A stretch of DNA of 64,000 nt from Ylistrum balloti (lineage: Eukaryota): assembly GCF_031769215.1 (NCBI RefSeq), contig NW_026782072.1, positions 1-64,000 on the forward strand, given 5' to 3'. A model generated the notes under the pieces. That model was not told where the DNA came from. It did not search any database and worked only from the letters and a program-made list of their open reading frames with translations. The position numbers and the translations under genes are program-made. Within the stretch, counting starts at the first letter, position 1. Every line of letters starts with the position of its first letter. This document shows positions 9,402 to 32,568 of this stretch, one piece after another.

Positions 9402-9448
<47 letters not shown>

Positions 9449-9675
9449 AGTCACGCCTAGTAATTGGAGGCTGAATATATACGTCACTTAGAAATAAAGA
9501 TATGATACATACATAATCAACTAAGCATCGTGTGCAAAATTCCCTTCTTACATTCTTTTGATTTGCACACGATACGGTTTTGCATACGGCTGCCTTCACA
9601 TGTATTTTGTACGATTCACGTATACCTCCTTTAATGCACACGATTTTGGTTTGCTCACGCAATGTCCCTATAACT
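8929..9675 (+). promoter_or_regulatory. MT-B promoter: metal-response elements and a TATA-like box
   Basis: MRE core TGCRCNC at 8929-8935 (TGCACGC), 9530-9536 (minus strand), 9564-9570 and 9635-9641 (TGCACAC). cctataac at ~9667, ~85 bp upstream of ATGTCCGAAG. Confidence 0.7.
9404..9445. repeat. (TA)n microsatellite, ~21 units
   Basis: Direct reading. Confidence 0.98.
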
Positions 9676-9755
9676 AGCGTCATATTTTTTTATCAATAAT
9701 GAGCTGAAGAGACACATTCAGTCGTTTTCAGAGCGTTGAAAACTTTCCTCATGAG

Positions 9756-11470
9756 ATGTCCGAAGGCATATATTATTCGTTTATTATAAATCAGTTAAAT
9801 AAATATATCATTTCATTTATCTTTTTATCTATTTTTGTTTAATTTTTTTATTATTTATTTAAATAAATTAGACAATTATCGGTGATTAGTATTTCTATGT
9901 TCACATATGGCCTTGGATTTGGTGTAGAATTTTCCTTAAATTTCAGTGACTTCTAAACTGCCTGTCTGCATCAGAGACATCATACAAGTAATGAACACTT
10001 TGGTTGCAAACAGTTTAGATCAATAAACTGAACTGGATTTTTGGTAAAATGACCATTGCAAATAACTAATATTTTTAGTTAAATGTAGTCGGTATTACCG
10101 TGTTAAGAGTACCCGATTGGCCATTACAGAAATGAATTAAATAAAGACCTGGGTTCTTTCCTTATATCATAAACGTATGTAATATTTTATTATTATTATC
10201 TTAATAATCATAATTATCATAATCAAAGTCTAGCATTATGTATTAATCTGCCTCTTCCTTTTGATTATTGGTCTTATTCCTCTATCATATTTTAATTTAG
10301 CTTCCAGAAGTATGTACTCCTTCTGTTCCAAAATGTACATTAATGGATATTTATAAAATTAATTTGTTTAAAACGGCTATTTTTTCCGTTATCCTGCACT
10401 TCACTTCACTTAAAATGACAGAGCAATCCGTTTAATTAATTTGTTCTAAAATTACTTTTTTCTTGAGTGGGTGGTAATTATAAATATGGATCCATTACAC
10501 AAATTATATCAGGTACGGAAACAGAATTTAGAGGAGAAAATATTTACAAATTTAGGTTTTTATTTCGTATTCAGTCGTGTTCTTTGCCAAGTGTCCCGCT
10601 GGAAGGTGTGACTGTACTGGTGCGGGCTGCTGCACCAACAACTGTAGATGTCCCGGTTGTAAGGTCGACTGTGGATGTTTCTGTAAGTTGGAAACAAAAT
10701 TCAAAAATTCAAAATTAAAAACAAATTTTCTCTTGTATTTGCTAAAGAACCAGTCTGATACTTTGGAAAGTATACTTAAACTTTAATGACAAGACGTTGA
10801 TGGCTGTGATCTTACTTGATTCTGAAGATGAAAGCATTACACCATCATGTCAATAACACTGGACAACAAATTATATTGAAACCAATTAAATAAATTACTA
10901 TGTAGCACATGTATATTTATAGTATAAATTGTATCTTTGGTTAAGTCGCGAGGGCTGCTACCTGTCCTGACGGAATCTGTCATATGGGAGTTGCTTGTAT
11001 ATTAGTATCAATAATCCGCTTTTGAGTTAGTGACAAACCTTGTCGATACACCATTATTTAACCTGTTATATATCGATACCAATAGATCAAAAATATTTTA
11101 AATGTTCATTTTATTTTAACGAACAGGTAGAAGTATAATGATGGTGTACTTTTGATAATAATGTACATTTCTTCACGTCTTTAGTACATCGCTGATTAAA
11201 ATCGTTGTGTATCAAAGAAAAAGATATATTTCAAAATGAAAACCCATATAAAAATAACTAATCTTGTTCGAGTATTGACTAAATTTACCAATATAAAAGC
11301 TACTTCTCATGTTTTCTTTGTCAGGGGCTAACTTAGTGTGTTCCGCGGACTGCCAGTCTGGGAGGTGTTGCGGTACTAACGCCTGCCATTGCAGTGGTTG
11401 GTGTGGATGTCCAACGTGCATAGGCAGCTAGAACTTGTAGGTGTTCTGCAGCTGTTCGTGTAAGTAGTAA
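9756..11470 (+). pseudogene. MT: Metallothionein pseudogene MT-B
   Basis: Exon I ATGTCCGAAG 9756-9765 is followed by GCATAT instead of GTAAGT. Exon II 10575-10682 (first Cys->Phe). Exon III is truncated (10946-~10998, ..TCPDGICHMGVAC, no donor). Exon IV starts at 11325 and hits TAG at 11429-11431, then fuses to a frameshifted remnant of the exon V end (acttgtaggtgttctgcag-ctgttcgtgtaagtagtaa, 11433-11470). Confidence 0.85.
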
Positions 11471-14400
11471 GCGGCTACGTAATCGAAAATCCAATTCCGA
11501 TCTTGGATGGAATGTCCTACACTGCTCTCTAACTGCCTGTTGACAAATTGATAGATACAATTAAATTATTTTGTTGATTCAAAGAGCTTTATATATTTTT
11601 CAAGCTGTCTTAAAACTTTATTAACTTTATTTTATTAACAACTAGATCTACATTTATATTATAAATAATTTCTGTTCTCTTATTCCTAACATATTTTCAG
11701 GATGTAAAAGTAATAAATATGAAAAAAAGCATAAAATTTTGAGTTTTGCTGTATACTTATGAACCATGGATTTGATAACAAATAGTATGCTAAAACAACA
11801 AAGAAAATACGCACATTTCAACAGAGCCTTAAGTCGTGAAATTATGACAAAATATGACCAAAAGAAAGATTTACACGCAGATCGAAGAAGTGAACTTTTA
11901 GCGGGGCAAAGACTAATGATGTTTGTTAACGAATAGCTCAATCTCAATACCGAATCATAATCAAAAACATGCAATATCTGGCATTGAGTGCCAAGCTAGG
12001 GCTTTGCAAAAGATATGTGTCAATCATATCATATACCAAACCTCCATTAATATTAGGTGGAATGAAGGCTTAGAAGTCAATAAAAATTACAGAAAGCGTT
12101 TTTTTCGAGGTGCGAGAAGGACACAATGGAGTGCAATAAGATCTTAAATCTTGGAAATTATACTTTTTACGATCAAGACAATTGATAGTTGAACTTTGAT
12201 AGTATAGTGGTTTTTTTCCATGTTCAATAGTTTACAAAACTTTGTGGTACAAACATATTCAGTTTCGGTAAAACATAGTTCTAGCAATTGATACACATTA
12301 ATTGTGTGTCCCCAATGTTCGACCCGCTGCCAAAAAGTGTTTATTACTCATGAAGATATTACAACCTTTGTTTGCACTGTGACATTAGTAATAAAAGACC
12401 TTTGCATGTGATGCAAATTGATTCCAAAGCATCCATGATCATTTATTTTCATCGAATAAATTACGTAGAAAATAATAACCAAATTATCCTTTTCAATGTA
12501 GTATCTCTCAGCATGATTGATATAAATTATAAATACACTTACATATGTAAAACAGAAACAAGAGAACAGAATTTTAATTCAAAGCACATATCGATGGACA
12601 GGGTAAAAATAAGAACAACAACAAAAATACACGAAGACGCTATAAAAGGAACCATTCTATGTTCAAATATCATTAAAAGGACAAACAAATGAATCCCACA
12701 TTTTAATGAAATTCAGAGTTAGATACAGTGGATCCAAATAATGAACAAAACAGCATTATAGGGTTGTTTCATGCTTCTTTGACTTTTGAGTTATGCTAAG
12801 GGTCCAAGTTTGGAAGTCTAGATGGCGACTGAGAAAAATCCAAAGTGACCTAAAGTAGTCAAAATGTCGACGGGGAGGTACTCTAGCCTCATAAGACAAT
12901 ATATTTCGTAATTCTCATTTATCTAATTTTAGAAGAACATCAAATACATGTGTATATTCTGAACAGTGCCACAAATCGATTGAATTAAAACTGGGCATAC
13001 AGTTGAGGACTAATAGTCCTCTAGCAATGTCTACCACATGCAATCTCGAAGATTGTACCAAAGACACAAAAATTAATGGCACATTTTAATAAAATTTAGA
13101 GTTAGATGCTGTAGAGTTGCATATGGTCTGTAAAACCTCAAACGTAGGACGTTCCAATATTCAGTTAGTGTAAAGATTCTAATTGAACCACAATATTAAT
13201 TTGATTTTCATCAAATTGCCTTATTGGCAAGCCGGGTTTCAATTTGATTAACCATCTACTGCAATACAGTACATCAAAGCGAAACGATACAATATACTGT
13301 ACATGTGGATACTTGTAATTATGCTGTTAAAATAATCCGTAGTTACATATCAGCTACATCGAAGTAGGTACTGAAGAAAATCAAAATTTGTCGAAAGAAA
13401 TCTTAAGATTTAGATGGAGAGGTGCACTAACTCCATAATTCAATAACTTTGATAATATTCTCATCTCGAATGATTTGATAGGAACGTCAAGCACGCGTGC
13501 ATATTCTGACCGTATTACTCTTCATATCAAAACATGTCATACAAGTTACAGTGGGGTGTTCTCTGAATGTAAACATTTTTATACAAGAATGTGTTGCTTT
13601 ATGATACAATGGCAAGTCAATTATATACTGTTTCATATAGGATGTATTTCTTCACCTGGATTGTTACCTGATATTTACCGGTTCCTCACAAAACATTTCT
13701 TCATATTTGATGTATTACAATTTTAAAAAAACATTGAAATGTTGTTATCAAAGCAATTTAGATGTATGAAAAATGTTGATATAAAAATGTGAATAATTAA
13801 ATTTGACAATTCAGCACTAAATTATATTTGAAAACATCGAACTATTATATTGGATGATACCGTTATATACAACACACTATAAATTTAATTGTTTTTTTTA
13901 TTATTATTATTATTTAAAATAAGTCATTGAATCAAAGAAAAAAGCGCATAATAATGTTGTAGGCTACAAGCACGCATACCGGTAATAATACTGAACGTCA
14001 AGACTTGTACGTATTGTAATTATATCCAACAAAAAGAGGATGACTTACATATTTAATCATAATTCAAAATTTAGGAGTTACTGTTAGGTTTTTAAATAAT
14101 TTACCATGCTACATGGTTGATCGAGAACTTGACATAAGCAATTCCACTTTTAAATGATACAAAAAACAGGAAAATTGAATAATTGATTAAGATTCTAAAG
14201 AAAGACGGCATACTGTTATAATTTATAATGAAGTATTTATATATGATTAAATAAAATTTTAGTGTTCAAAAAATTTCGGTTCCATAGAAATATTTTTAAA
14301 TAAAATTGTCTGGTATATGCAGGATTTTCAATTTTGAGAAAGTACAATAGATAAAACTTGGTAAGCAGATATTACATTTCGATTTTACATAAATTGAATA

Positions 14401-15394
14401 GCGATTTTTTTTAATTTTTCGATATCAGTTTGCTTTAGATTACATGAAAACGCATTGTGATTTTAAAAAGATACTTTGATACTATTAAATAATCACACAA
14501 GAAACTTACTTTGTATTTAGAGCAAGTAACCATTAATTCATAGTGGAAACTGGCAAACGGAATGATGCAGGATACCAAAATAAAATTGTCTTCATTTTTA
14601 ATCAAATGACATATATGTCCAAATATATCAAGTTGAAAGCTAATGTCAGTTATCAGCTGAACATAAGAAAATTATGAAAATACCACTAGATATGTCCAAA
14701 TGCAATTAAGTTGATAAAACTCAGGAATTTCAACCATAACAAAACCTTAAAATAATGATAGAACATGAGATGTGAAATGATGCATTTGATTTCTCTTTAT
14801 TTCATATGGCGAAAAAGAACAAAAGTATTCATTTTTTAACATATATCCGAGATATTTAGGTAACACCAATAAAAAAGTATCTCAGGTTGTGAACGTTACG
14901 GTATTATGTGATTAGTCCTCCAAAAATAATTATCACTTTCAAGAACACATTATTGATGGACATCTCAACAGTAAGAGAATGTATCAATAGATTATCAAAA
15001 CATCATCTGCATGGAAAGAGAAGTCATTTCACTCTCTCTGTCCTTATTCTTAGATATAATAGTAACGGTTCATAGTTGTAACAAGCAACAGTAATATTGA
15101 AACATAGTATTACATTTCCAAAATACACAATATAAGGAAATTATAACTTTATATCACAACATATACTAGATAATACGAAAATAGAGATCCGCTTTGTTGT
15201 ATGATTAAAGTTGAACATTAATTTTAAAACATCAGAGTCGGTAGTTGAAGACAAAAAAAATATCTTTATTGATATCTGGCGAGATTGCATAAGCCTTACA
15301 AAGTTACAGCTGATGATGAAAAAGTATATGACATTTATGTAGAATGTCATTACCGGGAATATACACACACTATATTTTAACAGTACATATATGT

Positions 15395-16215
15395 TGCACA
15401 CGAACATGTAATGAGTGCACACGATGATACACAAGCATCACTGCACACGGTTGATTTTGTATTACGTATAAACAAAATACATATCTATTTTTAAAAAAAA
15501 ACAATCGTGCTATCTCCTATTGTTTCTATCTCTGAAATAGGTTGTAACAGACAAAGATTGTATAATTATCCATCAGGAAGTATTGACATGACAGGGGATT
15601 ACATCTTTTGGGTGTGTTTACATATTCGGAAAACATATGCGTCTTAGCTTACGTCATTTATACCGACATAATGAAATGTTGCATTCAGTCTAATCATGTC
15701 GAGTTACATATCAGTCACTCCAACAAAGTTGACAATAAACACGTTGTAACATTAAGTATGTGGTGTTACAGGCAAACGTACAAATCTCTAAATGATCATC
15801 CCGAAAAAAGTCAGTATGATACTTCCTTATATATCTACTGTAGTTCACGTCGTCGCTTAATAATTTGATAATCTGTAACACTCCTGGTTCATTTAATATC
15901 TACTATATTTTTTTTATATTCTATTGTAAGTGGTTGACTTGATAATGACTACCTTTTATATATCTATGATCGAGCTCTAAAATTAGTAATCACATATTTT
16001 ACTTGGCAACGAATGTAATTAACGTAAGTATAACACTCCTATTGCAGTTATAATAATTTCCTTGTCATCGCTGCACACCACCCTGGTTTTGCTAAGGGCT
16101 ATCTTCACATAAATATTTTGCGCGTGGTTCTACCTATTCATGTCAATTCACACGATACTTAGTTTGCACACGCATCGTCCCATTTTTGCACACGCATCGT
16201 CCCATTTCCTATAAG
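15395..16215 (+). promoter_or_regulatory. MT-C promoter: distal and proximal MRE clusters plus TATA box
   Basis: TGCACAC at 15395, 15416, 15442 (distal) and 16072, 16165, 16187 (proximal). TATAAG at 16210-16215. Confidence 0.85.
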
Positions 16216-16336
16216 TATTGTCACATTTTGCAATTGGACAATACCCTGACAATTGATCTATCCAGTAGCGCTGAGAAGATTTTCCGGTTCTGAAGGTACT
16301 CTATAGAAGATCTGAAGGTACTCTATCGAAGCCGAA

Positions 16337-18444
16337 ATGTCTGAAGGTAAGTAGAGTGTTTATGTCATGATTACGAACGGTTTCATGTTAGTGTTAAAGT
16401 AAATAACATATTAAATTGGTAGCTCTTACCATTGTTTTGGAAAGTACAAAACGTAAGAATATAAGTACGTTTGATAATATAATTTCCAAAAATCGTATTT
16501 CCTCGTATTGAGACCAAAACTTGTAGTTGAAATTCATCGGTTGTTCGCTTAAATCTAGGAGTTGAAATTTTGTGATACCTAATTTTTGTAAGTACTTCTC
16601 CCGTTTGATTTTTTCACACATTTTTGACATTGATAACCGCATGGTAGTGGTAGGTAGCTATTTTTACTTTGCCTGTCTGCAATTATCATTGTAGATAAAC
16701 AGGTAGTTGATTGCTGATGGGCCATCCGTCTCAGATATAAACCCCAATTTTCACCGAAAACTGATTTTATTTCCGTTTTCAGCATTCCACTATATTTGGT
16801 GATCTTTTTTCAGAATGCTTTCGAACAATAAGACATCGACTTTTCTTTTACGTCTTATAAGAACCCTCGAAGAGTACTGAACGATCGATATGATCATACG
16901 GTGCGGTGAAGATGTTTCTACATCTTAATGAAATGTGGAGTATAAAATATTCAGTAAGGGTAGTTAAACATATTAGTAGTATCTGACGACATGGGGATTT
17001 CTGTTCAATAGTCTATTGAAAAAGAAACATTTTCCTACCCAACAGTTGCGTTCTGTGCCAAGTGTCCTGGTGGACAGTGCGGCTGCACAGGTGCTGGATG
17101 CTGTACTACGAGCTGTAGATGCCCCGGATGTAAAGTAAACTGTGGATGTTTCTGTAAGTTAAAAGTGAATAGTCTTTTATAATAGGACAGTGGAGGTTTC
17201 ATGAAATACCGACGCTAAGAATAACAGGAACTGCAATCCTACAAAACATTTAAAATTCTAATTGTGCTTTTCTGTGTTACTTGCTTGTTGTATTTGTAAC
17301 AACGTTGGGGCGATATAGATCTGTACTATGGATACTGTTCAGTTAGATCACTTTGTGATATCATGGTGACAAAAAAGTATCTGTCACTGTCCAAGGCGCT
17401 GGGAACAAGCTGAAGGATACATATATCACGTTAATACTGAAGAGGACTTAAACTGATTTACAATACTTTATGTTTCTAATTTAGCGGCAAAGGCCTCAGT
17501 TTGTCCCGACGGAATCTGTCAGATGGGAGTTGATTGTGAATGTGGCTGCAAGTGCAGCAGCGCATGTACGTGTCCCAACTGCAAGGCCGGATGCAAATGT
17601 GCAGGTAAGTACATTTAACTTCCTTCGCATATAATCATAATCATAGTTGTCAGAGTTACCTTTCTCGCTTTATATTGTCAGTTATACTCCGTTATACCAT
17701 AAAGGATTGGAAGGAATCCATCAGATTTTATCTGGTTAGTCTAGAAAACATTTTGTTATAAAAGTGAAGCTTTTATGTGTAGAGTTTATTTTTGTATATT
17801 TTACTGACAACTTGATTTCATTTCAATTCATTTCACAAATAAATAAGGAACATTATACATGTACAAATAGTAATAAATGTATTGCCTATAATGTCTCAAC
17901 TTTTACTTGGTGGTACTATTTCTTGTTTGTCAGGTGCCAACTTCGTGTGTACCGCGGACTGCCAGTCTGGGATGTGTTGCGGTACCAGGGCCTGTCAGTG
18001 TAGCGGCAAGTGCGCATGTCCAAAATGCAAGTGCAACTGTGCCTCTGGTAAGTACCGGAGTTCTTAGGAACAGGACCTGTCATTGGCTGTTACATAATAC
18101 CCTATTTATTTAAGGCAAATAGCATGAAGAGTACAAATTCCTGAGAACTTCAGTTGGTACAATGATCCAAGAGTCATGTAATATATCTGGATATATTACT
18201 CCGTTGTTTAAAGTTGTATATCTATAGAAGTTACAGTTAAACACAAAAAAAAATTTCAGTATTCAAAAGTGCTTAAGTTATATCTTTACAGGATAAATTT
18301 GAAAAACATGTGAAATTTTCTCGTCAGTTTTTGATATCGTTATTTATCAATCAATCATACCTTACAGGGGCATGTGCGTGCGGTGTGGGCTGTACCGGAC
18401 CTAAAACATGCAGGTGTGGTGCTGGATGTAGGTGTAAGCTGTGA
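16337..18444 (+). CDS. MT: Metallothionein MT-C, 142 aa, 40 Cys, 5 exons
   Basis: Exons 16337-16346, 17046-17153, 17485-17604, 17934-18047, 18368-18444 (429 nt, open, TGA). Protein: MSEVAFCAKCPGGQCGCTGAGCCTTSCRCPGCKVNCGCFSAKASVCPDGICQMGVDCECGCKCSSACTCPNCKAGCKCAGANFVCTADCQSGMCCGTRACQCSGKCACPKCKCNCASGACACGVGCTGPKTCRCGAGCRCKL. AATAAA at 18693. Confidence 0.95.
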
Positions 18445-21400
18445 AAAATCACATCTTTGGAGAATATGACACCATACCGGATGGACTGACCAATTCTTTA
18501 TCAACTCTTTACGGATATATTGATTAACATTTAAATTTGAAACTCCTGCTTGAATCCCTCGTTTTGTGATTGTCAATGACTTTATTTTGGTTATTTTACA
18601 CACAATTATCTTATTCTAATATAAAATGATTGTTGACAATTGTCATCTTGTTCTCTATCCTTTGGAAATCTTTGAAATGTAAATCTAATAACAATAAATA
18701 TTGGTATCTGCTTCAATGAGAGTTTTGTAGATTTATTTATGGACATGATGTTATTTTTGTCTTTAACCTCTGAATCCTGCAGGACTAATAGATTGGTCGA
18801 AAGAAATGTTTAGATTTAGATGGCGAGGTGCACTAACTCCATAATTCAATAACTTTGATAATATTCATATCTCGCATGGTTTGATAGGAATGTCAAACAC
18901 GCGTGCATATTCTGACCGTACTACTCTTCATATCAAAACATGTCATACAAGTTACAGTTGGGTGTTCTCTGAATGTCAATAAAAGAAGAATGTGTTGTTT
19001 TATGATACAATGGCAAGTCAATTCACCTGGATTGTTACCTGATATTTACCCGTTCCTCACAAAACATTTTTTTATATTTGATGTATGACAATTTTTAAAA
19101 AACATTGAAATGTTGTTATTAAAGTAATTTAGATGTATGAAAAATGTTATTATAAAAATTGGAATAAAGAACTTTGACAGTTCAGCACTAAATTATATTC
19201 GAAAAACAATTTACTATTAAATTGGATGATACAGTAATATGCAACACAAAGAAAGACTATAAACTGATGTTTTTTCTCTAGAATAAGGGAACAAAAGTAA
19301 TTGAAACAAAAAAAAGCGCATAATAATGTTGTTGGTTACAAGCACGCATACCGGTAATAATACTGAACGTCAAGACTTGTACGTATTGTAATTATATCCA
19401 ACAAAAAGAGGATGACTTATATATCTAATTATAATTCAAAATTTAGGAGTTACTGTTAGGTTTTAAAATAATATACCACGCTCCATGGTTTATCGAGAAC
19501 ACGACATAAGCAATTCCACTTTTAAATGATACAAAAACAAAAAACAGGAAAATTGAATAATTGGTGAAGATTCTAAAGAAAGACGCCGCACAGTTATAAT
19601 GCATAATTAATTATTTATATATATCATTAAATAAAATTTAGTAGTCCCATATTTTGGTTTCATACAAAATACTTTATAAAAATATATATTAAATAGTTTT
19701 TAAAAAGATATATTAAATATTTTTTTAAATAATAAGTGAATTTGGTCTGATGTATGTAGGATTCTCAATTTTGAGAAAATATCGTACTTCGGTGATTAGA
19801 ACTTGCTAAGCAGATTTCAGTTTTACAAATATAGAATAGCGATATTTTTCTATATCACTTTGCTATATTCTATATTAAAACCTATTATAATTTCTTAAAA
19901 TTACTATTAAATGATCACACAAAAAACTTATTTTGTACTTAGTAACCATTAATTCATAGTGGAAACTGGCAAACGGAATGATGCAGGATACCAAAATAAA
20001 ATTGTCCTCATTTTTATTATAATGCCATAGATGTCCCAAATATATCAAGCTGAAAGCTAATGTCAGTTATCAGCTGAACATAAGAAAATTATCAAAATAC
20101 CATTAAATATCTCCAAATGCAATTAAGTTGATAAAACTCAGGAATCTCAGTCATAATAGAACCTTAAAATAATTCAGCAACGTATGATATGATAGAACAT
20201 GGGATGTGAAATGATGCATTAGGTTCCTCTATATTTTTCATGGTGAAAGAGAACAATTTTTTTTTACATATATCCGAGATATTTAGGTAAGGTTATTGAA
20301 CAATTATTATAATGGAAATCAGCATTGGAAATTTATTTATAAACAATTATTTGAAATCTGATAAAATCAATCAATCAAATAATATTTACGAAGTCAAAAT
20401 TTGATTTTAAGTTTTAAAGGTAAACTTAACTGCTGGAATGGAAACTAATTAAGGGAAAAGATTATAATCCCTGTCAAAACTAATTGCCCTGTAGGGAAAT
20501 TCCAAATGCTGGCTTTCAGAGATACTCCTCAAACCTGGGGAACCACTAGGAGAGTCTCCGACATGAAGTCTCAAAAATTTGGAACCACCTTATATAACTA
20601 CTTAACCTATACTGAGAGCTTGAGATGTCTTATCTGTTGAAGGCCGAAGGCGGAGTGGATGTGAAATAAATACGTATATGAATAAAAAAGAACAAAGCAT
20701 GTCCTATGGAAATAAAACAGAGCGTTTTAAAGTGTCAGAACATTACACTATATTGCGAGTGTTGTCCTGTTATCATCTATCTTATATTTCAAATACAGAT
20801 CTACAACAATCCATTTTTCTTGTTTCACCAATAGCTGAAATTGCATCAATAAATAACTGTTAACAAGACGAAATAAAATACACAAAGCACAGTTCAAAGC
20901 ATGGAATGATGGGTGATTTCTGTTCTTAAGTGTGTATATAGAATATACTTTATATAATTACTAATTCACTGTATAATCATCCCGTGTTCGTGATATAACA
21001 GTCTTGCCAACATGAATCCCCATAACAATACAATGACATTGCAATTATGTACCTTTAACCATATTAAAGGATGCTCGTTTGCAATAATCAAGGGAAGTGA
21101 TTAATGCTCTTGGCAACTGATGTGCTAGTGATCAAAACATTGCGTGCCAATATTACTGTACTTAGGTCTCTGGTTCGGTGACTATGCTCATATGAATTTG
21201 GCTGTGAAAAAAACTGTCAAAATCTGCTAATCGAGTCCTTAATTTCTCAGGTACCTATTTTAATGTTGTATTACCATATGACACTTGGATAAAATAAATT
21301 TAAAATACCTATAAATGTCAACAGGTTGTGAACATTACGGTATCATGTGATAAGTCCTCCAAAAATAACGATCACTTTCAAGAACACATTATTGATGGAC

Positions 21401-21845
21401 ATCTCAACAGTAAGAGAATGTATCAATAGATTATCAAAATATCATCTGCATGGAAAGAGAAGTCATTTCACTCTCTCTGTCCTTATTCTTAGATATAATA
21501 GTAATGGTTAATAGTTGTAACAAGCAACAGTAATATTGAAACATAGTATAACATTTCTAAAACACACAATATAAGGAAATTATAACTTCATACCACAACA
21601 TATACTAGATAATACGAAAATAGAGATCGTCAGACCCGCTTTGTTGTATGATAAACGGTGAACATTAATTTTAAAAATTCACTGTCGGTAGTTGAAGACA
21701 AAAACATACATTTATTGATATATGGCAGTTGTTTCGGCAAGATTGTATAAGCCTTGAAACTAATGATGAAAAAAGCAAATGACATTTATGTAGAATGTCT
21801 TTATCGGGATTATACACACACTATAGTTTAACAGTACATATATGT

Positions 21846-22644
21846 TGCACACGAACATGTAATGAGTGCACACGATGATACACAAGCATCACTGCACACG
21901 GTTGATTTTGTATTACGTATTAACAAAGTACATATCTATTTTTTAACAAAAACAATCGTGCTATATCCTATTGTTTCTATCTCTAAAGTATGTTGTTACA
22001 GACAAAGATGGTATAATTTTCCTCCATCAGGAAGTATTAACATGACAGGGTTTTATCTTTTGGGTGTGTTTACATATTCGGAAAAAATATGCGTCTTAGA
22101 TCACGTCATTTATACCGATATAATGAAATGCTGCATTCAGTCTAATCATGTCGAGTTACATATCAGTCACTCCAACAAAGTTGACAATAAACACGTTGTA
22201 ACATTAAGTCTGTGGTGTTACAGGCAAACGTACAAATCTCTAAATGATCATCCCGAGAAAAGTCAATATGATACTTCCTTATACATCTATTGTAGTTCAC
22301 GCCGCCGCTTAATAATTTGATAATCTGTAATATTCCTGATTCATTTAAAATCTACTTTATTTTCTATATTCTATTGTAAGTGGTTGACTTGATAATGACT
22401 ACCTTGTATATATCTATGATCGAGCTCTAAAATGTAGTAATCACATATTTTACTTGGCAATGCATGTAATTAACGTAAGCATATCACTCCGAGTGCAGTT
22501 CCTATAATTTCCTTGTCATCGTTGCACACCACCCTGGTTTTGCTATGGGCTATCTTCACATAAATATTTTGCGCGTGGGTCTACCCATTCATGTCGATTC
22601 ACACGATACTTAGTTTGCACACGTATCGTCCTATTTCCTATAAG
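21846..22644 (+). promoter_or_regulatory. MT-D promoter: MRE clusters plus TATA box
   Basis: TGCACAC at 21846, 21867, 21893, 22523, 22616. Minus-strand TGCACTC at 22491-22497. TATAAG at 22639-22644. Confidence 0.85.
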
Positions 22645-22765
22645 TATTGTCACATTTTGCAATTGGACAATACCCTGACAATTGATCTATCCAGTAGTGC
22701 TGAGAAGATTTTCTGGTTCTGAAGGTACTCTATAGAAGGTCTGAAGGTACTCTATCGAAGCCGAA

Positions 22766-24842
22766 ATGTCTGAAGGTAAGTAGAGTGTTTATGTCATGAT
22801 TACGAACGGCTTCATGTCAGTATTAAAGTAAATAACTTATTGATTTGGTAGCTCATACCATTGCTTGGAAAGTACAAAACATTAGAATATACGTACGTTT
22901 GATAATATAATTTCCAAAAGTCACTTCACGCCAGAGCGTGTTTGCTAGTAGTAAGAACAAAACTTGTAGGTGAAATCAATCTGTTGTTCGCTTAAGGCTA
23001 TGAGCTGAACATTTTTGATACCTGATTTCTGTAAGCACTTCTCCCGTTTGACGTCTTCACACATTTTTGACATGGATGAACGCATGGTAGCGGCTATTTC
23101 GGTTGGCATGTCTGAAATTGTTATTTTAGATAAACAGGTAGTTGATTGCTCATGGGCCATCCGTCTCAGAAATAAACCCTAACTTTCACCTAAAGTTATA
23201 TTTTCGTTTTCAGCATTCCTCTACTTTCGGTGATTTTTTAAATGCTTTCGAACAATTAGACGTCGATTGTTCTTTTGTGTCTTAATAGTACCATCGAAGA
23301 GTACAAAACGATCGATATAACAACAAGGTGCGGCGAAGATTTATCTAATATTCAGTAAGGGTAGTTATATTAGTAGTATCTGACGACAAGGGGATTTGTG
23401 TTCAATAGTCTATTGAAAAAAAAACATTTTTCTACCCAACAGCTGCGTTCTGTGCCAAGTGTCCTGGTGGACAGTGCGGCTGCACAGGTGCGGGATGCTG
23501 TACTACAAGCTGTAGATGCCCCGGATGTAAAGTAAACTGTGGATGTTTCTGTAAGTTAAAAGTGAATAGTCTTATATAATAGGACAGTGGAGGTTTCATG
23601 AAATACCGACGCTAAGAATAACAGGAACTGCAATCCTACAAAACATTTAAAATTCTAATTGTGCTTTTCTGTGTTACTTGCTTGTTGTATTTGTAACAAC
23701 GTTGGGGCGATATAGATCTGTACTATGGATACTGTTCAGTTAGATCACTTTGTGATATCATGGTGACAAAAAAGTATCTGTCACTGTCCAAGGCGCTGGG
23801 AACAAGCTGAAGGATACATATATCACGTTAATACTGAAGAGGACTTAAACTGATTTACAATACTTTATGTTTCTAATTTAGCGGCAAAGGCCTCAGTTTG
23901 TCCCGACGGAATCTGTCAGATGGGAGTTGATTGTGAATGTGGCTGCAAGTGCAGCAGCGCATGTACGTGTCCCAACTGCAAGGCCGGATGCAAATGTGCA
24001 GGTAAGTACATTTAACTTCCTTCGCATATAATCATAATCATAGTTGTCAGAGTTACCTTTCTCGCTTTATATTGTCAGTTATACTCCGTTATACCATAAA
24101 GGATTGGAAGGAATCCATCAGATTTTATCTGGTTAGTCTGGAAAACATTTTGTTATAAAAGTGAAGCTTTTATGTGTAGAGTTTATTTTTGTATATTTTA
24201 CTGACAACTTGATTTCATTTCAATTCATTTCACAAATAAATAAGGAACATTATACATGTACAAATAGTAATAAATGTATTGCCTATAATGTCTCAACTTT
24301 TACTTGGTGGTACTATTTCTTGTTTGTCAGGTGCCAACTTCGTGTGTACCGCGGACTGCCAGTCTGGGATGTGTTGCGGTACCAGGGCCTGTCAGTGTAG
24401 CGGCAAGTGCGCATGTCCAAAATGCAAGTGCAACTGTGCCTCTGGTAAGTACCGGAGTTCTTAGGAACAGGACCTGTCATTGGCTGTTACATAATACCCT
24501 ATTTATTTAAGGCAAATAGCATGAAGAGTACAAATTCCTGAGAACTTCAGTTGGTACAATGATCCAAGAGTCATGTAATATATCTGGATATATTACTCCG
24601 TTGTTTAAAGTTGTATATCTATAGAAGTTACAGTTAAACACAAAAAAAAAATTTCAGTATTCAAAAGTGCTTAAGTTATATCTTTACAGGATAAATTTGA
24701 AAAACATGTGAAATTTTCTCGTCAGTTTTTGATATCGTTATTTATCAATCAATCATACCTTACAGGGGCATGTGCGTGCGGTGTGGGCTGTACCGGACCT
24801 AAAACATGCAGGTGTGGTGCTGGATGTAGGTGTAAGCTGTGA
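22766..24842 (+). CDS. MT: Metallothionein MT-D, 142 aa, 40 Cys (differs from MT-C only by V4A)
   Basis: Exons 22766-22775, 23443-23550, 23882-24001, 24331-24444, 24766-24842. All splice sites are canonical and the frame is open. AATAAA at 25091. Confidence 0.95.
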
Positions 24843-27800
24843 AAAATCACATCTTTGGAGAATATGACACCATACCGGATGGACTGACCAATTCTTTATC
24901 AACTCTTTACGGATATATTGATTAACATTTAAATTTGAAACTCCTGCTTGAATCCCTCGTTTTGTGATTGTCAATGACTTTATTTTGGTTATTTTACACA
25001 CAATTATCTTATTCTAATATAAAATGATTGTTGACAATTGTCATCTTGTTCTCTATCCTTTGGAAATCTTTGAAATGTAAATCTAATAACAATAAATATT
25101 GGTATCTGCTTCAATGAGAGTTTTGTAGATTTATTTATGGACATGATGTTATTTTTGTCTTTAACCTCTGAATCCTGCAGGACTAATAGATTGGTCGAAA
25201 GAAATGTTTAGATTTAGATGGCGAGGTGCACTAACTCCATAATTCAATAACTTTGATAATATTCATATCTCGCATGGTTTGATAGGAATGTCAAACACGC
25301 GTGCATATTCTGACCGTACTACTCTTCATATCAAAACATGTCATACAAGTTACAGTTGGGTGTTCTCTGAATGTCAATAAAAGAAGAATGTGTTGTTTTA
25401 TGATACAATGGCAAGTCAATTCACCTGGATTGTTACCTGATATTTACCCGTTCCTCACAAAACATTTTTTTATATTTGATGTATGACAATTTTTAAAAAA
25501 CATTGAAATGTTGTTATTAAAGTAATTTAGATGTATGAAAAATGTTATTATAAAAATTGGAATAAAGAACTTTGACAGTTCAGCACTAAATTATATTCGA
25601 AAAACAATTTACTATTAAATTGGATGATACAGTAATATGCAACACAAAGAAAGACTATAAACTGATGTTTTTTCTCTAGAATAAGGGAACAAAAGTAATT
25701 GAAACAAAAAAAAGCGCATAATAATGTTGTTGGTTACAAGCACGCATACCGGTAATAATACTGAACGTCAAGACTTGTACGTATTGTAATTATATCCAAC
25801 AAAAAGAGGATGACTTATATATCTAATTATAATTCAAAATTTAGGAGTTACTGTTAGGTTTTAAAATAATATACCACGCTCCATGGTTTATCGAGAACAC
25901 GACATAAGCAATTCCACTTTTAAATGATACAAAAACAAAAAACAGGAAAATTGAATAATTGGTGAAGATTCTAAAGAAAGACGCCGCACAGTTATAATGC
26001 ATAATTAATTATTTATATATATCATTAAATAAAATTTAGTAGTCCCATATTTTGGTTTCATACAAAATACTTTATAAAAATATATATTAAATAGTTTTTA
26101 AAAAGATATATTAAATATTTTTTTAAATAATAAGTGAATTTGGTCTGATGTATGTAGGATTCTCAATTTTGAGAAAATATCGTACTTCGGCGAATAGAAC
26201 TTGCTAAGCAGATTTCAGTTTTACAAATATAGAATAGCGATATTTTTCTATATCACTTTGCTATATTCTATATTAAAACCTATTATAATTTCTTAAAAGT
26301 ACTATTAAATGATCACACAAAAAACTTATTGTGTACTTAGTAACCATTAATTCATAGTGGAAACTGGCAAACGGAATGATGCAGGATACCAAAATAAAAT
26401 TGTCCTCATTTTTATTATAATGCCATAGATGTCCCAAATATATCAAGCTGAAAGCTAATGTCAGTTATCAGCTGAACATAAGAAAATTATCAAAATACCA
26501 TTAAATATCTCCAAATGCAATTAAGTTGATAAAACTCAGGAATCTCAGTCATAATAGAACCTTAAAATAATTCAGCAACGTATGATATGATAGAACATGG
26601 GATGTGAAATGATGCATTAGGTTCCTCTATATTTTTCATGGTGAAAGAGAACAATTTTTTTTTTACATATATCCGAGATATTTAGGTAAGGTTATTGAAC
26701 AATTATTATGATGGAAATCAGCATTGGAAATTTATTTATAAACAATTATTTGAAATCTGATAAAATCAATCAATCAAATAATATTTACGAAGTCAAAATT
26801 TAATTTTAAGTTTTAAAGGTAAACTTAACTGCTGGAATGGAAACTAATTAAGGGAAAAGATTATAATCCCTGTCAAAACTAATTGCCCTGTAGGGAAATT
26901 CCAAATGCTGGCTTTCAGAGATACTCCTCAAACCTGGGGAACCACTAGGAGAGTCTCCGACATGAAGTCTCAAAAATTTGGAACCACCTTATATAACTAC
27001 TTAACCTATACTGAGAGCTTGAGATGTCTTATCTGTTGAAGGCCGAAGGCGGAGTGGATGTGAAATAAATACGTATATGAATAAAAAAGAACAAAGCATG
27101 TACTATGGAAATAAAACAGAGCGTTTTAAAGTGTCAGAACATTACACTATATTGTGAGTGTTGTCCTGTTATCATCTATCTTATATTTCAAATACAGATC
27201 TACCACAATCCATTTTTCTTGTTTCACCAACAGCTGAAATTGCATCAATAAATAACTGTTAACAAGACGAAATAAAATACACAAAGCACAGTTCAAAGCA
27301 TGGAATGATGGGTGATTTCTGTTCTTAAGTGTGTATATAGAATATACTTTATATAATTACTAATTCACTGTATAATCCTCCCGTGTTCGTGATATAACAG
27401 TCTTGCCAACATGAATCCCCATAACAATACAATGACATTGCAATTATGTACCTTTAACCATATTAAAGGATGCTCGTTTGCAATAATCAAGGGAAGTGAT
27501 TAATGCTCTTGGCAACTGATGTGCTAGTGATCAAAACATTGCGTGCCAATATTACTGTATTTAGGTCTCTGGTTCGGTGACTATGCTCATATGAATTTGG
27601 CTGTGAAAAAAACTGTCAAAATCTGCTAATCGAGTCCTTAATTTCTCAGGTACCTATTTTAATGTTGTATTACCATATGACACTTGGATAAAATAAATTA
27701 AAAATACTTATAAATGTCAACAGGTTGTGAACATTACGGTATCATGTGATAAGTCCTCCAAAAATAACGATCACTTTCAAGAACACATTATTGATGGACA

Positions 27801-28244
27801 TCTCAACAGTAAGAGAATGTATCAATAGATTATCAAAACATCATCTGCATGGAAAGAGAAGTCATTTCACTCTCTCTGTCCTTATTCTTAGATATAATAG
27901 TAATGGTTAATAGTTGTAACAAGCAACAGTAATATTGAAACATAGTATAACATTTCTAAAACACACAATATAAGGAAATTATAACTTCATACCACAACAT
28001 ATACTAGATAATACGAAAATAGAGATCGTCAGACCCGCTTTGTTGTATGATAAAAGGTGAACATTAATTTTAAAAATTCACTGTCGGTAGTTGAAGACAA
28101 AAACATACATTTATTGATATATGGCAGTTGTTTCGGCAAGATTGTATAAGCCTTGAAACTAATGATGAAAAAAGCAAATGACATTTATGTAGAATGTCTT
28201 TATCGGGATTATACACACACTATAGTTTAACAGTACATATATGT

Positions 28245-29043
28245 TGCACACGAACATGTAATGAGTGCACACGATGATACACAAGCATCACTGCACACGG
28301 TTGATTTTGTATTACGTATTAACAAAGTACATATCTATTTTTTAACAAAAACAATCGTGCTATATCCTATTGTTTCTATCTCTAAAGTATGTTGTTACAG
28401 ACAAAGATGGTATAATTTTCCTCCATCAGGAAGTATTAACATGACAGGGTTTTATCTTTTGGGTGTGTTTACATATTCGGAAAAAATATGCGTCTTAGAT
28501 CACGTCATTTATACCGATATAATGAAATGCTGCATTCAGTCTAATCATGTCGAGTTACATATCAGTCACTCCAACAAAGTTGACAATAAACACGTTGTAA
28601 CATTAAGTCTGTGGTGTTACAGGCAAACGTACAAATCTCTAAATGATCATCCCGAGAAAAGTCAATATGATACTTCCTTATACATCTATTGTAGTTCACG
28701 CCGCCGCTTAATAATTTAATAATCTGTAACATTCCTGATTCATTTAAAATCTACTTTATTTTTTATATTCTATTGTAAGTGGTTGACTTGATGATGACTA
28801 CTTTGTATATATCTATGATCGAGCTCTAAAATGTAGTAATCACATATTTTACTTGGCAATGCATGTAATTAACGTAAGCATAACACTCCGAGTGCAGTTC
28901 TTATAATTTCCTTGTCATCGTTGCACACCACCCTGGTTTTGCTAAGGGCTATCTTCACATAAATATTTTGCGCGTGGGTCTACCCATTCATGTCGATTCA
29001 CACGATACTTAGTTTGCACACGTATCGTCCTATTTCCTATAAG
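28245..29043 (+). promoter_or_regulatory. MT-E promoter: MRE clusters plus TATA box
   Basis: TGCACAC at 28245, 28266, 28292, 28922, 29015. Minus-strand TGCACTC at 28890-28896. TATAAG at 29038-29043. Confidence 0.85.
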
Positions 29044-29164
29044 TATTGTCACATTTTGCAATTGGACAATACCCTGACAATTGATCTATCCAGTAGTGCT
29101 GAGAAGATTTTCTGGTTCTGAAGGTACTCTATAGAAGGTCTGAAGGTACTCTATCGAAACCGAA

Positions 29165-31243
29165 ATGTCTGAAGGTAAGTAGAGTGTTTATGTCATGATT
29201 ACGAACGGCTTCATGTCAGTATTAAAGTAAATAACTTATTGATTTGGTAGCTCATACCATTGCTTGGAAAGTACAAAACATTAGAATATACGTACGTTTG
29301 ATAACATAATTTCCAAAAGTCACTTCACGCCAGAGCGTGTTTGCTAGTAGTAAGAACAAAACTTGTAGGTGAAATCAATCTGTTGTTCGCTTAAGGCTAT
29401 GAGTTGAACATTTTTGATACCTGATTTCTGTAAGCACTTCTCCCGTTTGACGTCTTCACACATTTTTGACATGGATGATCGCATGGTAGCGGCTATTTCG
29501 GTTGGCATGTCTGAAATTGTTATTTTAGATAAACAGGTAGTTGATTGCTCATGGGCCATCCGTCTCAGAAATAAACCCTAACTTTCACCTAAAGTTATAT
29601 TTTCGTTTTCAGCATTCCTCTACTTTCGGTGATTTTTTTTAAATGCTTGCGAACAATTAGACGTCGATTGTTCTTTTGTGTCTTAATAGTACCATCGAAG
29701 AGTACAAAACGATCGATATAACAACAAGGTGCGGCGAAGATTTATCTAATATTCAGTAAGGGTAGTTATATTAGTAGTATCTGACGACAAGGGGATTTGT
29801 GTTCAATAGTCTATTGAAGAAAAAAAAAATTTTCTACCCAACAGCTGCGTTCTGTGCCAAGTGTCCTGGTGGACAGTGCGGCTGCACAGGTGCGGGATGC
29901 TGTAATACAAGCTGTAGATGCCCCGGATGTAAAGTAAACTGTGGATGTTTCTGTAAGTTAAAAGTGAATAGTCTTTTATAATAGGACAGTGGAGGTTTCA
30001 TGAAATACCGACGCTAAGAATAACAGGAACTGCAATCCTACAAAACATTTAAAATTCTAATTGTGCTTTTCTATGTTTGCTTGTTGTATTTGTAACAACG
30101 TTGGGGCGATATAGATCTGTACTATGGATACTGTTCAGTTAGATCACTTAGTGATATCATGGTGACAAAAAAGTATCTGTCACTGTCCAAGGCGCTGGGA
30201 ACAAGCTGAAGGATACATATATCACGTTAATACTGAAGAGGACTTAAACTGATTTACCATACTTTATATTTCTAATTTTAGCGGCAAAGGCCTCAGTTTG
30301 TCCCGACGGAATCTGTCAGATGGGAGTTGATTGTGGATGTGGCTGCAAGTGCAACAGCGCATGCCAGTGTCCTTACTGCAAGGCCGGATGCAAATGTGCA
30401 GGTAATTTTAACTCTCTTGGCATATAATCATAATTACAGTTGTCAGAGTTACCTTCCTCGCTTTTTATTGTCAGTTATATTCCGATATGCCCTAATGGAT
30501 TGGAAAGAATCTATCAGATTTTATCTGGTTAGTGTGGAAAACATTTGGTTATAAAAGTGAAGTTTATTTTTGTATATTTTACTGACAACTTAATTTTTAT
30601 TTCAATTTATTTCACAAATAAATGAGGAACATTATACATGTACAAATAGTAATAAACATATTGCCTATATTTCGCAAACAGAGAAATGTTCCAACTTTTA
30701 CTTGGTGGTACTATTTCTTGTTTGTCAGGTGCCAACTTCGTGTGTACCGCGGACTGCCAGTCTGGGATGTGTTGCGGTACCAGCGCATGTCAGTGTAGCG
30801 GCAAGTGCGCATGCCCAAAGTGCAAGTGCAACTGCGCATCTGGTAAGTACCGGAGTTCTTAGGAACAGGACCTGTCAGTGGCTGTTACATAATACCCTAT
30901 TTATTTAAGGCAAATAGCATGAAGAGTACAAATTCTTGGGAACTTCAGTTGGTACAATGATCCAAGAGTCATGTAATATATCTGAATATATTATTCCGTT
31001 GTTTAAAGTTGTATATCTATAGAAGTTACAGTTAAATACAAAAAATAAATTTTATATATTCAAAAGTGTTTATAGTTATATCTTTACACAGATAAATTTG
31101 AATAACGTGTAAAAATTGCTCATCAGTTTTTGATATCATTATTTATCAATCAATCATACCTTACAGGGGCATGTGCGTGTGGTACGGGCTGTACTGGACC
31201 TAAAACATGCAGGTGTGGTGCTGGATGTAGGTGTAAGCTGTGA
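29165..31243 (+). CDS. MT: Metallothionein MT-E, 142 aa, 40 Cys
   Basis: Exons 29165-29174, 29845-29952, 30282-30401, 30729-30842, 31167-31243. Seven non-Cys substitutions versus MT-D (T>N; E>G, S>N, T>Q, N>Y; R>S; V>T). All 40 Cys are kept. AATAAA at 31492. Confidence 0.95.
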
Positions 31244-32471
31244 GCGATCATGTCTTTGGAGAATATGACACCATACCGGATGGACTGACCAATTCTTTAT
31301 CAACTCTTTACGGATATATTGATTAACATTCAAATTTAAAAGTCCTGCATGAATCCCTCGTTTTGTGAGTGTCATTGACTTTGTTTTGGTTATTTTACAC
31401 TCAATTATCTTATTCTAATATAAAATTATTGTTGACAATTATAATCTTGTTTTCTTTGCTTTGGAAATCTTTAACATGTAAATCGAATTGCAATAAATAA
31501 TGGCATATGTTTTTATGAGAGTTTTGTAGATTTGTTACGGACATGATGTTATTGTTGTCTTTAACTTCTGAATCCTGCAGGATTCGGTTTCAGTATGAAA
31601 TGTAGACGCTCAGGTTCTTCCCTAACCAGTTTGGTGTACTACAAAAACGTACAATAAGTACAATGTGCACCATTTAGACTATTACCTTTGTATTTTGGTG
31701 TAATCATAGGCGAGTCCATAAAGGAGGAGAGGGGCACCTTCTAAAACTTGTAAGCGATCATCATTTGCAAGAACAGTAAGCTTTAATTCCATTTCAAATG
31801 CAGAGACCTATGGCACTTTAAATCACATAAAAGTGAAAACATTGTCTATGAGAAAATAGACGTTGGAAAGTAAATTGTAATTAGCATTACCCTTGAGTTA
31901 TTTCGCTGACAAATCTTAATCAACCGTATCGTAACGTATATGCATCACAGTCCGTTTAGTTCTTGAATTTATTGGTAAACTTACCGTATCAAAATTACTC
32001 TACCTTGTATTTTTTAAAGTTCTGGATATTGTCCTCCACCACTGTGTACAATGCAATCGGTGATTATTTGTTTAATTCGAAGCTAGTACGATTATCAAAT
32101 GTATATGTATATAAATTTGGAATACAAAAACAAAACAAAAAAAGCAAATGGAATGGAGACTGTACAAAATACAAAGAGGGTTATTTATTAGTTAACGAAA
32201 ATATGTGAGTCGTGTAATCCGAAATCCCTGGTCCTCGCTTTTTAATGTTGTTAAATCAGCCATAAACGAAGAAATGGGGTGTCGATGGAAAAGCTGCGTA
32301 AATAATGACAGCCTACATAGCGACTTTTAACCAAATTGTAAGATTTTAAAAAGTTTGATTGTGAAAAAGTGTCATGTTGACTTTGAAAATACGTCTGCAT
32401 GTACGACAACATTTTACATGGGATATACAAGAAAAAATTACCATTGTTATGTGATATCTGACGATAAGCAG

Positions 32472-32568
32472 CACACACACGCCACCACCACTACCGCCAA
32501 CACCATTACCACTACACACACCACCACCACCACCACTACCGCCAACACCATTACCACTACACACACGC
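32472..32568. repeat. CAC/ACC-rich low-complexity tract with a ~41-45-bp duplication
   Basis: caccactaccgccaacaccattaccactacacacac occurs twice. Confidence 0.85.

What the first reader, a model, noticed from the sequence alone, without database searches (positions are those of the whole stretch)
22766..24842. MT-D is a 5'-E / 3'-C mosaic with a crossover in 23508-23670
Seen: the D promoter, intron 1 and exon II diagnostics (GCT codon 4, gcg, aca at 23507) match E. From 23671 onward (ctgtgttacttg; exons III-V; 3' UTR) D matches C almost base for base, while E differs. Inference: D arose by unequal crossing-over between E and C of two chromosomes, putting the C coding 3' part under the E promoter. 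The two spacers differ at an allele-like low level, so this is either very recent copy-number variation or two haplotypes assembled in tandem.
Basis: partly seen in the sequence, partly recalled or inferred. Interest (0 to 1): 0.7.

Follow-up and report, generated by a model that had tools for sequence, protein, structure and literature searches.

The report
Hybrid scallop metallothionein gene copy
In a saucer-scallop metal-binding (metallothionein) gene cluster, the middle of three tandem genes is the front of one neighbour joined to the back of the other, as unequal crossing-over would produce, but the data cannot show whether the extra copy is in the animal or was made by the genome assembly.

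Summary
Three 6.4-kb units carry intact 5-exon, 142-residue, 40-cysteine metallothionein genes: C, D and E. D matches E from 21322 to 23507 (99.2%, against 91.6% to C). It matches C from 23671 to 25182 (99.9%, against 93.4% to E) and on through the spacer to 27720. The single switch lies in 23508-23670, the longest tract where C and E are identical (163 bp).

The whole pattern equals one 6.4-kb tandem duplication, 17111-23507 against 23508-29909. The two copies differ by 34 substitutions and 4 indels (0.53%).

Whether D exists in the animal stays open. The copies differ by as much as the two haplotypes that this assembly kept separately 3 kb upstream (0.12-0.61%). No second haplotype of the array exists elsewhere in the assembly. 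D's private letters are almost absent from four other animals. Only short-read contigs of other individuals were available, so depth and spanning molecules could not be tested.

My odds are about 55% a real, rare or young copy-number variant made by unequal crossing-over. I give about 38% to an assembly artefact and about 5% to gene conversion. If real, it is an ordinary kind of event, seen here at base-pair resolution.

The parts
14883..21321 (+). Unit C: homology block 14883-18784 plus spacer 18785-21321. Gene C lies at 16337-18444.
   Evidence: Self-BLAST and three-way alignment; gene model.
21322..27720 (+). Unit D: homology block 21322-25182 plus spacer 25183-27720.
22766..24842 (+). Gene D. 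Exons are 22766-22775, 23443-23550, 23882-24001, 24331-24444 and 24766-24842, all with GT-AG introns. The product has 142 residues and 40 Cys. It equals the C protein except V4A and differs from the E protein at 7 residues.
   Evidence: The same exon layout in E gives exactly the public RefSeq protein XP_060067672.1.
21322..23507 (+). E-type part of D: end of the spacer, promoter, exon I, intron 1 and most of exon II. It is 99.18% identical to E and 91.57% to C.
23508..23670 (+). Crossover interval: the last 43 nt of exon II and the first 120 nt of intron 2. C and E are identical here over 163 bp, the longest such tract in the 3.9-kb homology. D has one private letter at 23574.
23671..25182 (+). 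C-type part of D: the rest of intron 2, exons III-V and the 3' UTR with AATAAA at about 25091. It is 99.93% identical to C and 93.42% to E.
21846..22645 (+). D promoter. There are seven metal-response-element cores (TGCRCNC) at -920, -902, -899, -873, -275, -243 and -150 from the ATG, and a TATA-like box at -127. The layout is identical to E and differs from C in the proximal three.
   Evidence: The window mean is 0.7 cores per kb.
17111..23507 (+). Copy 1 of the 6.4-kb duplicated segment: C 3' part, spacer 1 and D 5' part.
   Evidence: collinear with copy 2 over 6397 columns, with 34 substitutions and 4 indels.
23508..29909 (+). Copy 2 of the duplicated segment: D 3' part, spacer 2 and E 5' part.
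27721..31582 (+). Unit E, the last unit, with no spacer homology after 31582. Gene E lies at 29165-31243.
285..13962 (.). Stretch also present, as a second haplotype, at the start of contig C1057 (reverse strand). That contig ends at window 13962, 0.9 kb before unit C.

Best explanation
D is the hybrid gene left by one non-allelic homologous (unequal) exchange in a tandem metallothionein array. The ancestral layout was C - spacer - E. Gene E on one chromosome paired with gene C on the other, and the exchange resolved inside their 163-bp identical tract at the end of exon II and start of intron 2. The recombinant carries C - spacer - D - spacer - E. D has E's promoter, exon I, intron 1 and most of exon II, then C's exons III-V, 3' UTR and downstream spacer. 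The gene stays in frame and intact. It encodes the C-type protein (one residue different) under E-type metal-responsive control, so the net effect is one more dose of a 40-cysteine metal-binding protein. Because the two copies differ unevenly and at allele level, the partners were most likely two different homologues, so the copies captured existing allelic differences. The variant need not be old and is probably rare. Shown here: the mosaic, the single switch, intact genes and the allele-level difference. Inferred: the exchange itself, its interchromosomal nature and its presence in the animal.
For: There is a single clean switch, with 172:9 against 1:97 informative sites (p = 3e-63). The duplicated length equals one array period, with no extra letters at either end. 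The switch lies in the longest perfect C/E identity tract. All three genes keep splice sites, frame, all 40 Cys, the TATA-like box, the polyA signal and 7 metal-response cores. The same cluster shows the same layout again: a 4-unit, 5.9-kb array on contig C1057 has edge units distinct at their outer ends and hybrid-like inner units 0.45-0.6% apart. That array has 30 single-unit sites against 10 shared 2:2 sites of all three patterns, which two haplotypes alone do not readily give. Pecten maximus has a tandem pair 94% alike, so such arrays turn over within species. The window has no N, and the join is seamless and in register. In one other animal (X1) a contig bridges 23432-24005 with only 3 letters different from D.
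Against: The copies differ by 0.53%, the same as the two haplotypes of this very animal 3-16 kb upstream (0.12-0.61%, equally patchy). The assembly demonstrably failed to merge haplotypes there. No other contig holds a second haplotype of the array or of its flanks, as expected if the second haplotype sits in tandem. D's private letters at 21440, 22331, 22364, 22484, 22502, 23005, 23080, 23233 and 23574 are absent from contigs of all four other animals. Only 21656 is seen, in X1. The switch is also near the middle of the 3.9-kb homology block, where a repeat loop walked twice by an assembler would place it. The bridging contig is weak evidence, because short-read graph contigs can merge paralogues.
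Confidence: 0.55

Rival explanations
1. Assembly artefact. The animal has only C - spacer - E on both chromosomes. The assembler walked the loop (homology block - spacer - homology block) twice, or chained the two haplotypes through the C/E homology. The middle block was then built from reads entering from the spacer on either side, giving E-type on the left and C-type on the right. Polishing sorted the two alleles onto the two copies.
For: The difference between the copies is at allele level and equally patchy. The haplotypes are left unmerged right beside the array, with contig C1057 ending at window 13962. No second haplotype of the array is found anywhere else in 648 Mb. The switch lies at 57-61% of the homology block. 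D's private letters are not seen in four other animals. The public protein set holds a 142-residue model only for E, not for C or D.
Against: The join is seamless, in frame and in the longest identity tract, as recombination predicts. There is no gap or contig end at the unit. The nearby haplotype overlap extends 6.8-6.9 kb on each side of its indel, which suggests (inferred, not measured) that single reads there may be longer than the 6.4-kb unit, so such a walk would be unusual. A neighbouring 4-unit array cannot come from two haplotypes of a 2-unit array. Substitutions outnumber indels 34:4, so the differences are real variants and not read errors.
Confidence: 0.38
2. An older three-copy array in which D was later overwritten by gene conversion, its 5' half from E, its 3' half from C, or both. 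No unequal exchange created D.
For: Gene conversion is evidently active in the cluster. All three 2:2 site patterns occur in the C1057 array. C-type letters appear in the promoter contigs of other animals where the assembly's D and E have E-type letters. C3'/D3' are much closer (2 substitutions in 2.7 kb) than the rest (32 in 3.7 kb).
Against: Conversion tracts would have to cover the whole 6.4 kb, including both 2.5-kb spacers, and end exactly at the unit borders. One exchange explains the same data without any further junction.
Confidence: 0.05

Closest known systems
Hybrid genes from unequal crossing-over in tandem gene pairs (haemoglobin anti-Lepore type duplications, red/green opsin arrays); from general knowledge
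   Same: Two paralogues lie a few kb apart. There is a single switch of parentage inside a shared identical tract, and the duplicated length equals the spacing. The hybrid keeps one gene's promoter and the other's 3' coding part.
   Different: Those cases are proven on chromosomes and in families. Here the hybrid is seen only in one assembly. The hybrid protein is almost the same as one parent's (one residue different), so the change is mainly dosage and regulation.
Metallothionein copy-number variation: Drosophila Mtn duplications (Maroni et al. 1987, cited in PMC3857721) and yeast CUP1 tandem arrays (PMC12637435)
   Same: Tandem metallothionein copies are gained and lost by recombination between repeats, and copy number varies between individuals.
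   Different: In those systems the units are identical copies of one gene and the link with metal tolerance was tested. Here the parents are 6-8% diverged paralogues, and neither frequency nor phenotype is known.
Multimodular bivalve metallothioneins (beta2-like repeats plus beta1; PMC7826182, PMC9781358)
   Same: The C-terminal 9-Cys stretch fits the published bivalve beta1 pattern. Three upstream Cys blocks resemble the beta2-like pattern. The protein is 28% Cys.
   Different: Those papers deal with domain duplication inside genes. This finding is a whole-gene duplication with a hybrid junction. The public record names the protein 'keratin-associated protein 5-4-like'.
False (haplotypic) duplications in long-read assemblies of heterozygous genomes; from general knowledge
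   Same: The two copies differ at allele level, the second haplotype is missing elsewhere, and an unmerged haplotype overlap lies next door.
   Different: Such errors usually sit at gaps or contig ends with arbitrary junctions. This one is inside a gap-free contig with a junction in register between two different genes.

Membership tests
Mollusc (bivalve) metallothionein | High cysteine content (about 15-30%), arranged as CxC, CC and Cx2-4C groups | tested here: met
   The product has 40 Cys in 142 residues (28%), all conserved in C, D and E. The range is quoted from PMC7826182.
Mollusc (bivalve) metallothionein | C-terminal beta1 domain pattern [CxC]x3-6[CxC]x3Cx5[CxC]x3-5[CxC] | tested here: met
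   The exon IV end plus exon V reads CxC x4 CxC x3 C x5 CxC x3 CxC (translation, pattern).
Mollusc (bivalve) metallothionein | Match to a curated metallothionein profile | tested here: inconclusive
   Pfam gave no hit for any single exon of 24-39 residues. The joined protein was not searched. PDB sequences gave nothing. The protein atlas gave only weak metallothionein leads, score 0.86.
Mollusc (bivalve) metallothionein | Few or no aromatic residues | tested here: inconclusive
   There are three Phe in 142 residues and no Tyr, Trp or His in D.
Mollusc (bivalve) metallothionein | Metal-responsive promoter (metal-response-element cores) | tested here: met
   There are 7 TGCRCNC cores in the 1.2 kb upstream of each gene, against 0.7 per kb in the window. 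Binding and induction were not tested.
Mollusc (bivalve) metallothionein | Binds Cd, Zn or Cu; expressed | not testable with these tools
   No RNA run holds the stretch.
Hybrid gene from unequal crossing-over (tandem duplication by non-allelic homologous recombination) | Single switch of parental identity | tested here: met
Hybrid gene from unequal crossing-over (tandem duplication by non-allelic homologous recombination) | Switch lies in a tract identical in both parents | tested here: met
   The tract is 163 bp, the longest of all C/E identity tracts.
Hybrid gene from unequal crossing-over (tandem duplication by non-allelic homologous recombination) | Duplicated length equals the parental spacing, with no filler at the junction | tested here: met
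   6397 aligned columns with 5 gap columns.
Hybrid gene from unequal crossing-over (tandem duplication by non-allelic homologous recombination) | The arrangement exists on single DNA molecules of an animal | not testable with these tools
   Only short-read contigs of other animals were served. The identical tract is longer than their word size.
Haplotypic false duplication of an assembly | Copies differ as alleles do | tested here: met
   0.53% against 0.12-0.61% between the kept haplotypes.
Haplotypic false duplication of an assembly | Second haplotype absent elsewhere in the assembly | tested here: met
Haplotypic false duplication of an assembly | Half read depth on each copy | not testable with these tools
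   There are no reads of the assembled animal. The tool states that contig depth is not usable.
Haplotypic false duplication of an assembly | Sits at a gap or contig end | tested here: not met
   There is no N in the window. The unit is 14.9 kb from the contig start. Contig C1057 ends 0.9 kb before unit C.

The most novel reading that the evidence does not exclude
D is a real, segregating copy-number variant of a four-domain metallothionein in the saucer scallop. It was made by an exchange between homologues that re-paired the E-type metal-responsive promoter with the C-type coding part. It is one visible step in a cluster of at least ten genes on two contigs, where arrays grow, shrink and homogenise by recurrent unequal exchange. 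Copy number may then vary between animals and contribute to differences in cadmium handling, for which scallops are notorious.
Probability: 0.45. Interest if true: 0.45.

Novelty: new member of a known kind. Interest (0 to 1): 0.3.

Why it matters
Scallops hold unusually high cadmium loads (PMC12357810), and metallothionein gene dosage is a classic route to metal tolerance in flies and yeast. A base-pair-resolved hybrid copy would show how a scallop array gains genes and reshuffles promoters and coding parts. It would also give a simple marker (E-type intron 1 joined to the spacer) for surveying copy number in stocks. If it is an artefact, it is a useful warning. The public annotation of this genome would then count one metallothionein gene too many, and it already carries genes A and B twice on two contigs.

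Tried and rejected
- **Depth and allele fractions.** The one reads call returned only Logan contigs of four other animals. Contig depths (spacer about 14-15, exon II-III contig about 20-30) lie between the 1.5 and 2.0 ratios expected for three and two copies, and the tool warns against using them. I rejected them as evidence.
- **Linkage across the switch from contigs.** The identical tract (163 bp) exceeds the 31-letter word size, and contigs merge paralogues. The X1 contig that is D-like over 23432-24005 therefore does not prove the junction.
- **An open frame spanning 23507 and 23671 for an exact-product look-up.** None exists. The exon V frame look-up found nothing, and look-ups of the window's own genome are withheld.
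- **A second haplotype contig carrying a two-copy or three-copy array.** None was found.
- **Pfam and PDB on single exons.** No hits.
- **The joined 142-residue protein.** The joined model was not searched. Instead the public protein P0001, identical to my E model, was used.
- **Site 23503 as a sign of patchy repair at the crossover.** Rejected, because the outgroup shows it is a private change of E.
- **A genome paper naming the sequencing method for assembly GCF_031769215.1.** None was found in the library.

Full report
**What is there**

The window is the first 64 kb of contig C215, which is 1.22 Mb long, in a 648-Mb assembly of 1372 contigs. Self-comparison shows three tandem units:
- C, 14883-21321
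- D, 21322-27720
- E, 27721-31582

The alignment 14883-25182 against 21322-31582 is 95.4% identical over 10.4 kb. Each unit is a 3.9-kb homology block carrying a gene, followed by a 2.5-kb spacer. E is the last unit and has no spacer.

An older, 79%-alike spacer remnant (13386-14863) precedes C. The array is therefore (gene-spacer)n of several ages.

**Gene models**

Each of C, D and E has five exons with GT-AG introns. Each encodes 142 residues with 40 cysteines. Each has:
- a TATA-like box 127 nt before the ATG
- AATAAA 249 nt after the stop
- seven metal-response-element cores within 1.2 kb upstream, against 0.7 per kb in the window

My E model is identical, residue for residue, to the public protein XP_060067672.1. 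That record is named 'keratin-associated protein 5-4-like [Ylistrum balloti]'. This confirms both the exon layout and the species (saucer scallop).

The C-terminal cysteine spacing fits the bivalve beta1 metallothionein pattern published in PMC7826182. Three upstream blocks resemble that paper's beta2-like pattern. Pfam and PDB sequence searches on single exons gave nothing.

**The mosaic**

| Region of D | Identity to E | Identity to C | Sites D=E, C differs | Sites D=C, E differs |
|---|---|---|---|---|
| 21322-23507 | 99.18% | 91.57% | 172 | 9 |
| 23671-25182 | 93.42% | 99.93% | 1 | 97 |

Fisher p = 3e-63. D continues to match C's spacer as far as 27720.

The switch interval, 23508-23670, covers the last 43 nt of exon II and the first 120 nt of intron 2. 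It is the longest tract (163 bp) where C and E are identical in the whole homology block.

The D protein equals the C protein except V4A. It differs from the E protein at seven residues, none of them a cysteine.

Site 23503, where D sides with C inside the E-type part, is a change private to E. The Pecten maximus relative has the C/D residue there.

**One event**

Read differently, the data are a single 6.4-kb tandem duplication: 17111-23507 against 23508-29909. The two copies are collinear over 6397 columns, with 34 substitutions and 4 small indels (0.53%). There are no extra letters at either end.

An exchange between E on one chromosome and C on the other, resolved in the identical tract, gives exactly this. 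Gene conversion would need tracts covering both spacers and ending at the unit borders, so I rate it low.

The differences are uneven: 2 in the first 2682 bp and 32 in the remaining 3715 bp (p = 3e-6). A copy made from a sister chromatid that then aged should diverge evenly. Two different alleles captured at the exchange, or two alleles mis-assembled, fit better.

**Real or assembled?**

I found that contig C1057 (181 kb), reverse-complemented, dovetails with window 285-13962. The details come:
- substitutions are 0.61% in the first 6.9 kb and 0.12% in the next 6.8 kb
- there are 14 small indels and one 1.6-kb indel at about 7152
- the overlap reaches 6.8-6.9 kb to either side of that indel

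These are the two haplotypes of genes A and B, kept twice. They give a direct local measure of allelic difference. It is the same size and just as patchy as the difference between the two copies of the duplication.

C1057 ends 0.9 kb before unit C. No other contig holds a copy at 95% or better of 13963-17200, of the D unit, or of 29900-36000.

The bookkeeping of an artefact therefore works: the 'missing' second haplotype of C3'-spacer-E5' could be the second tandem copy. A repeat loop walked twice would also yield a middle block that is E-type on its left and C-type on its right, with a switch near the middle. The observed switch lies at 57-61% of the block.

Against the artefact:
- The join is seamless, in frame, and inside the longest identity tract.
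- The window has no gap.
- Substitutions outnumber indels 34:4, so the differences are real variants.
- The reach of the haplotype overlap suggests, though it does not measure, that single reads may be longer than the 6.4-kb unit.

**Other animals**

Five runs hold the stretch. All are stored as short-read graph contigs, from two studies, and none is RNA. I laid four of them on 20501-26500.

The locus is present at 95-99+% identity in all four. At D's private sites (21440, 22331, 22364, 22484, 22502, 23005, 23080, the 2-bp gap at 23233, and 23574) every run reads the letter of E or C. D's own letter appears only at 21656, in X1, beside the other letter. D as sequenced is therefore not an old, fixed paralogue. 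It is rare, young or not real.

One X1 contig covers 23432-24005 with only 3 letters unlike D. Because such contigs merge paralogues and the identical tract exceeds the 31-letter word size, this does not prove the junction.

In X1-X3 the only contig on 22055-22433 carries C-type letters at all 13 diagnostic sites. This suggests that 'C-type' and 'E-type' segments are exchanged between the genes in the population. I treat this as tentative.

Contig depths fall between the values expected for two and three copies, and the tool itself says not to use them.

**Cluster context**

C1057 carries a four-unit array with a 5.9-kb period (reverse-complement coordinates 27357-50410). Its layout mirrors C-D-E:
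- the first unit is distinct in its first 1 kb (promoter and intron 1)
- the last unit is distinct in its last 1 kb
- the inner parts are 0.45-0.6% apart

In the shared 4 kb there are 30 sites private to one unit and 10 sites split 2:2, in all three possible patterns. This points to real units with exchanges among them. Two haplotypes laid in series would not readily give it.

Pecten maximus has two 144-residue relatives 7.9 kb apart. They are 94% alike over 4.5 kb, while only exons align between the species. Such pairs are evidently renewed or homogenised within species. Recurrent unequal exchange is the natural mode of change for this cluster.

**Comparison and novelty**

The mechanism is the textbook one for hybrid genes in tandem pairs. 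Metallothionein copy-number change by recombination between repeats is classic in Drosophila (Maroni et al. 1987, cited in PMC3857721) and in yeast CUP1 (PMC12637435). Multi-domain bivalve metallothioneins are described in PMC7826182 and PMC9781358.

What is new is only the instance:
- a scallop case with the crossover mapped to 163 bp
- a gene the public record does not recognise as a metallothionein
- 142-residue models for C and D that are absent from the public protein set

**Verdict**

| Question | Answer |
|---|---|
| Observation | Confirmed |
| Single-exchange reading of the sequence | Well supported |
| Real, probably rare or young variant | About 55% |
| Assembly artefact | About 38% |
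| Gene conversion | About 5% |

Existence in the animal is unresolved. Reads of the assembled animal, or one PCR, would settle it.

Noticed in passing
window 285-13962; G000 contig C1057:1-15254 (loci L011, L017): Contig C1057 (reverse strand) dovetails with the start of this contig at 99.4-99.9% identity, with a 1.6-kb indel at window ~7152. Genes A and B are therefore present twice in the assembly as two haplotypes.
   Followed up: partly
G000 contig C1057:59591-82644 (loci L014, L015, L019, L020): This is a four-unit tandem array of metallothionein genes with a 5.9-kb period. The units are 0.45-2% apart, the edge units are distinct at their outer ends, and the site patterns need exchanges between units.
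   Followed up: partly
window 29165-31243: Gene E is the public protein XP_060067672.1, named 'keratin-associated protein 5-4-like'. The scallop relatives are named 'keratin-associated protein 5-5-like' (Pecten maximus) and 'Tenascin-X' (Mizuhopecten yessoensis, 200 residues, 46 Cys). None is labelled as a metallothionein. No 142-residue model for C or D is in the protein collection.
   Followed up: partly
L030 (Pecten maximus LR736842.1:31104445-31126569): There are two tandem 144-residue relatives 7.9 kb apart, 94% alike over 4.5 kb including non-coding DNA. Only the exons align with the saucer-scallop genes (75-87%).
   Followed up: partly
window 25545 joined to 23109 (run X1): One animal has a contig that runs from the spacer head at 25545, through 15 other letters, into intron 1 at 23109. 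In array terms this is a deletion of about 4 kb that removes most of a spacer plus the promoter and exon I of the next gene.
   Followed up: no
window 22055-22433: In three other animals the only contig laid here has C-type letters at all 13 sites where the assembly's D and E differ from C. The promoter types may not be fixed to their genes in the population.
   Followed up: partly
window 23408 (runs X2, X5): A contig matches D from 23408 onward, but its upstream 255 letters are found nowhere in the window or in the first 110 kb of C1057. This may be an insertion in intron 1 or a further gene copy in those animals.
   Followed up: partly
window 25420-26920 (and 19020-20520): This part of the spacer has 65-75% matches on dozens of other contigs, so it looks like an old transposon-like repeat inside the unit.
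   Followed up: no
window 36775-37490, 38199-39403, 40763-42480, 43374-44840, 45735-46583, 48409-49050, 52192-53305, 63307-63850: A run of separate satellite-like tandem arrays lies downstream of the gene cluster.
   Followed up: no
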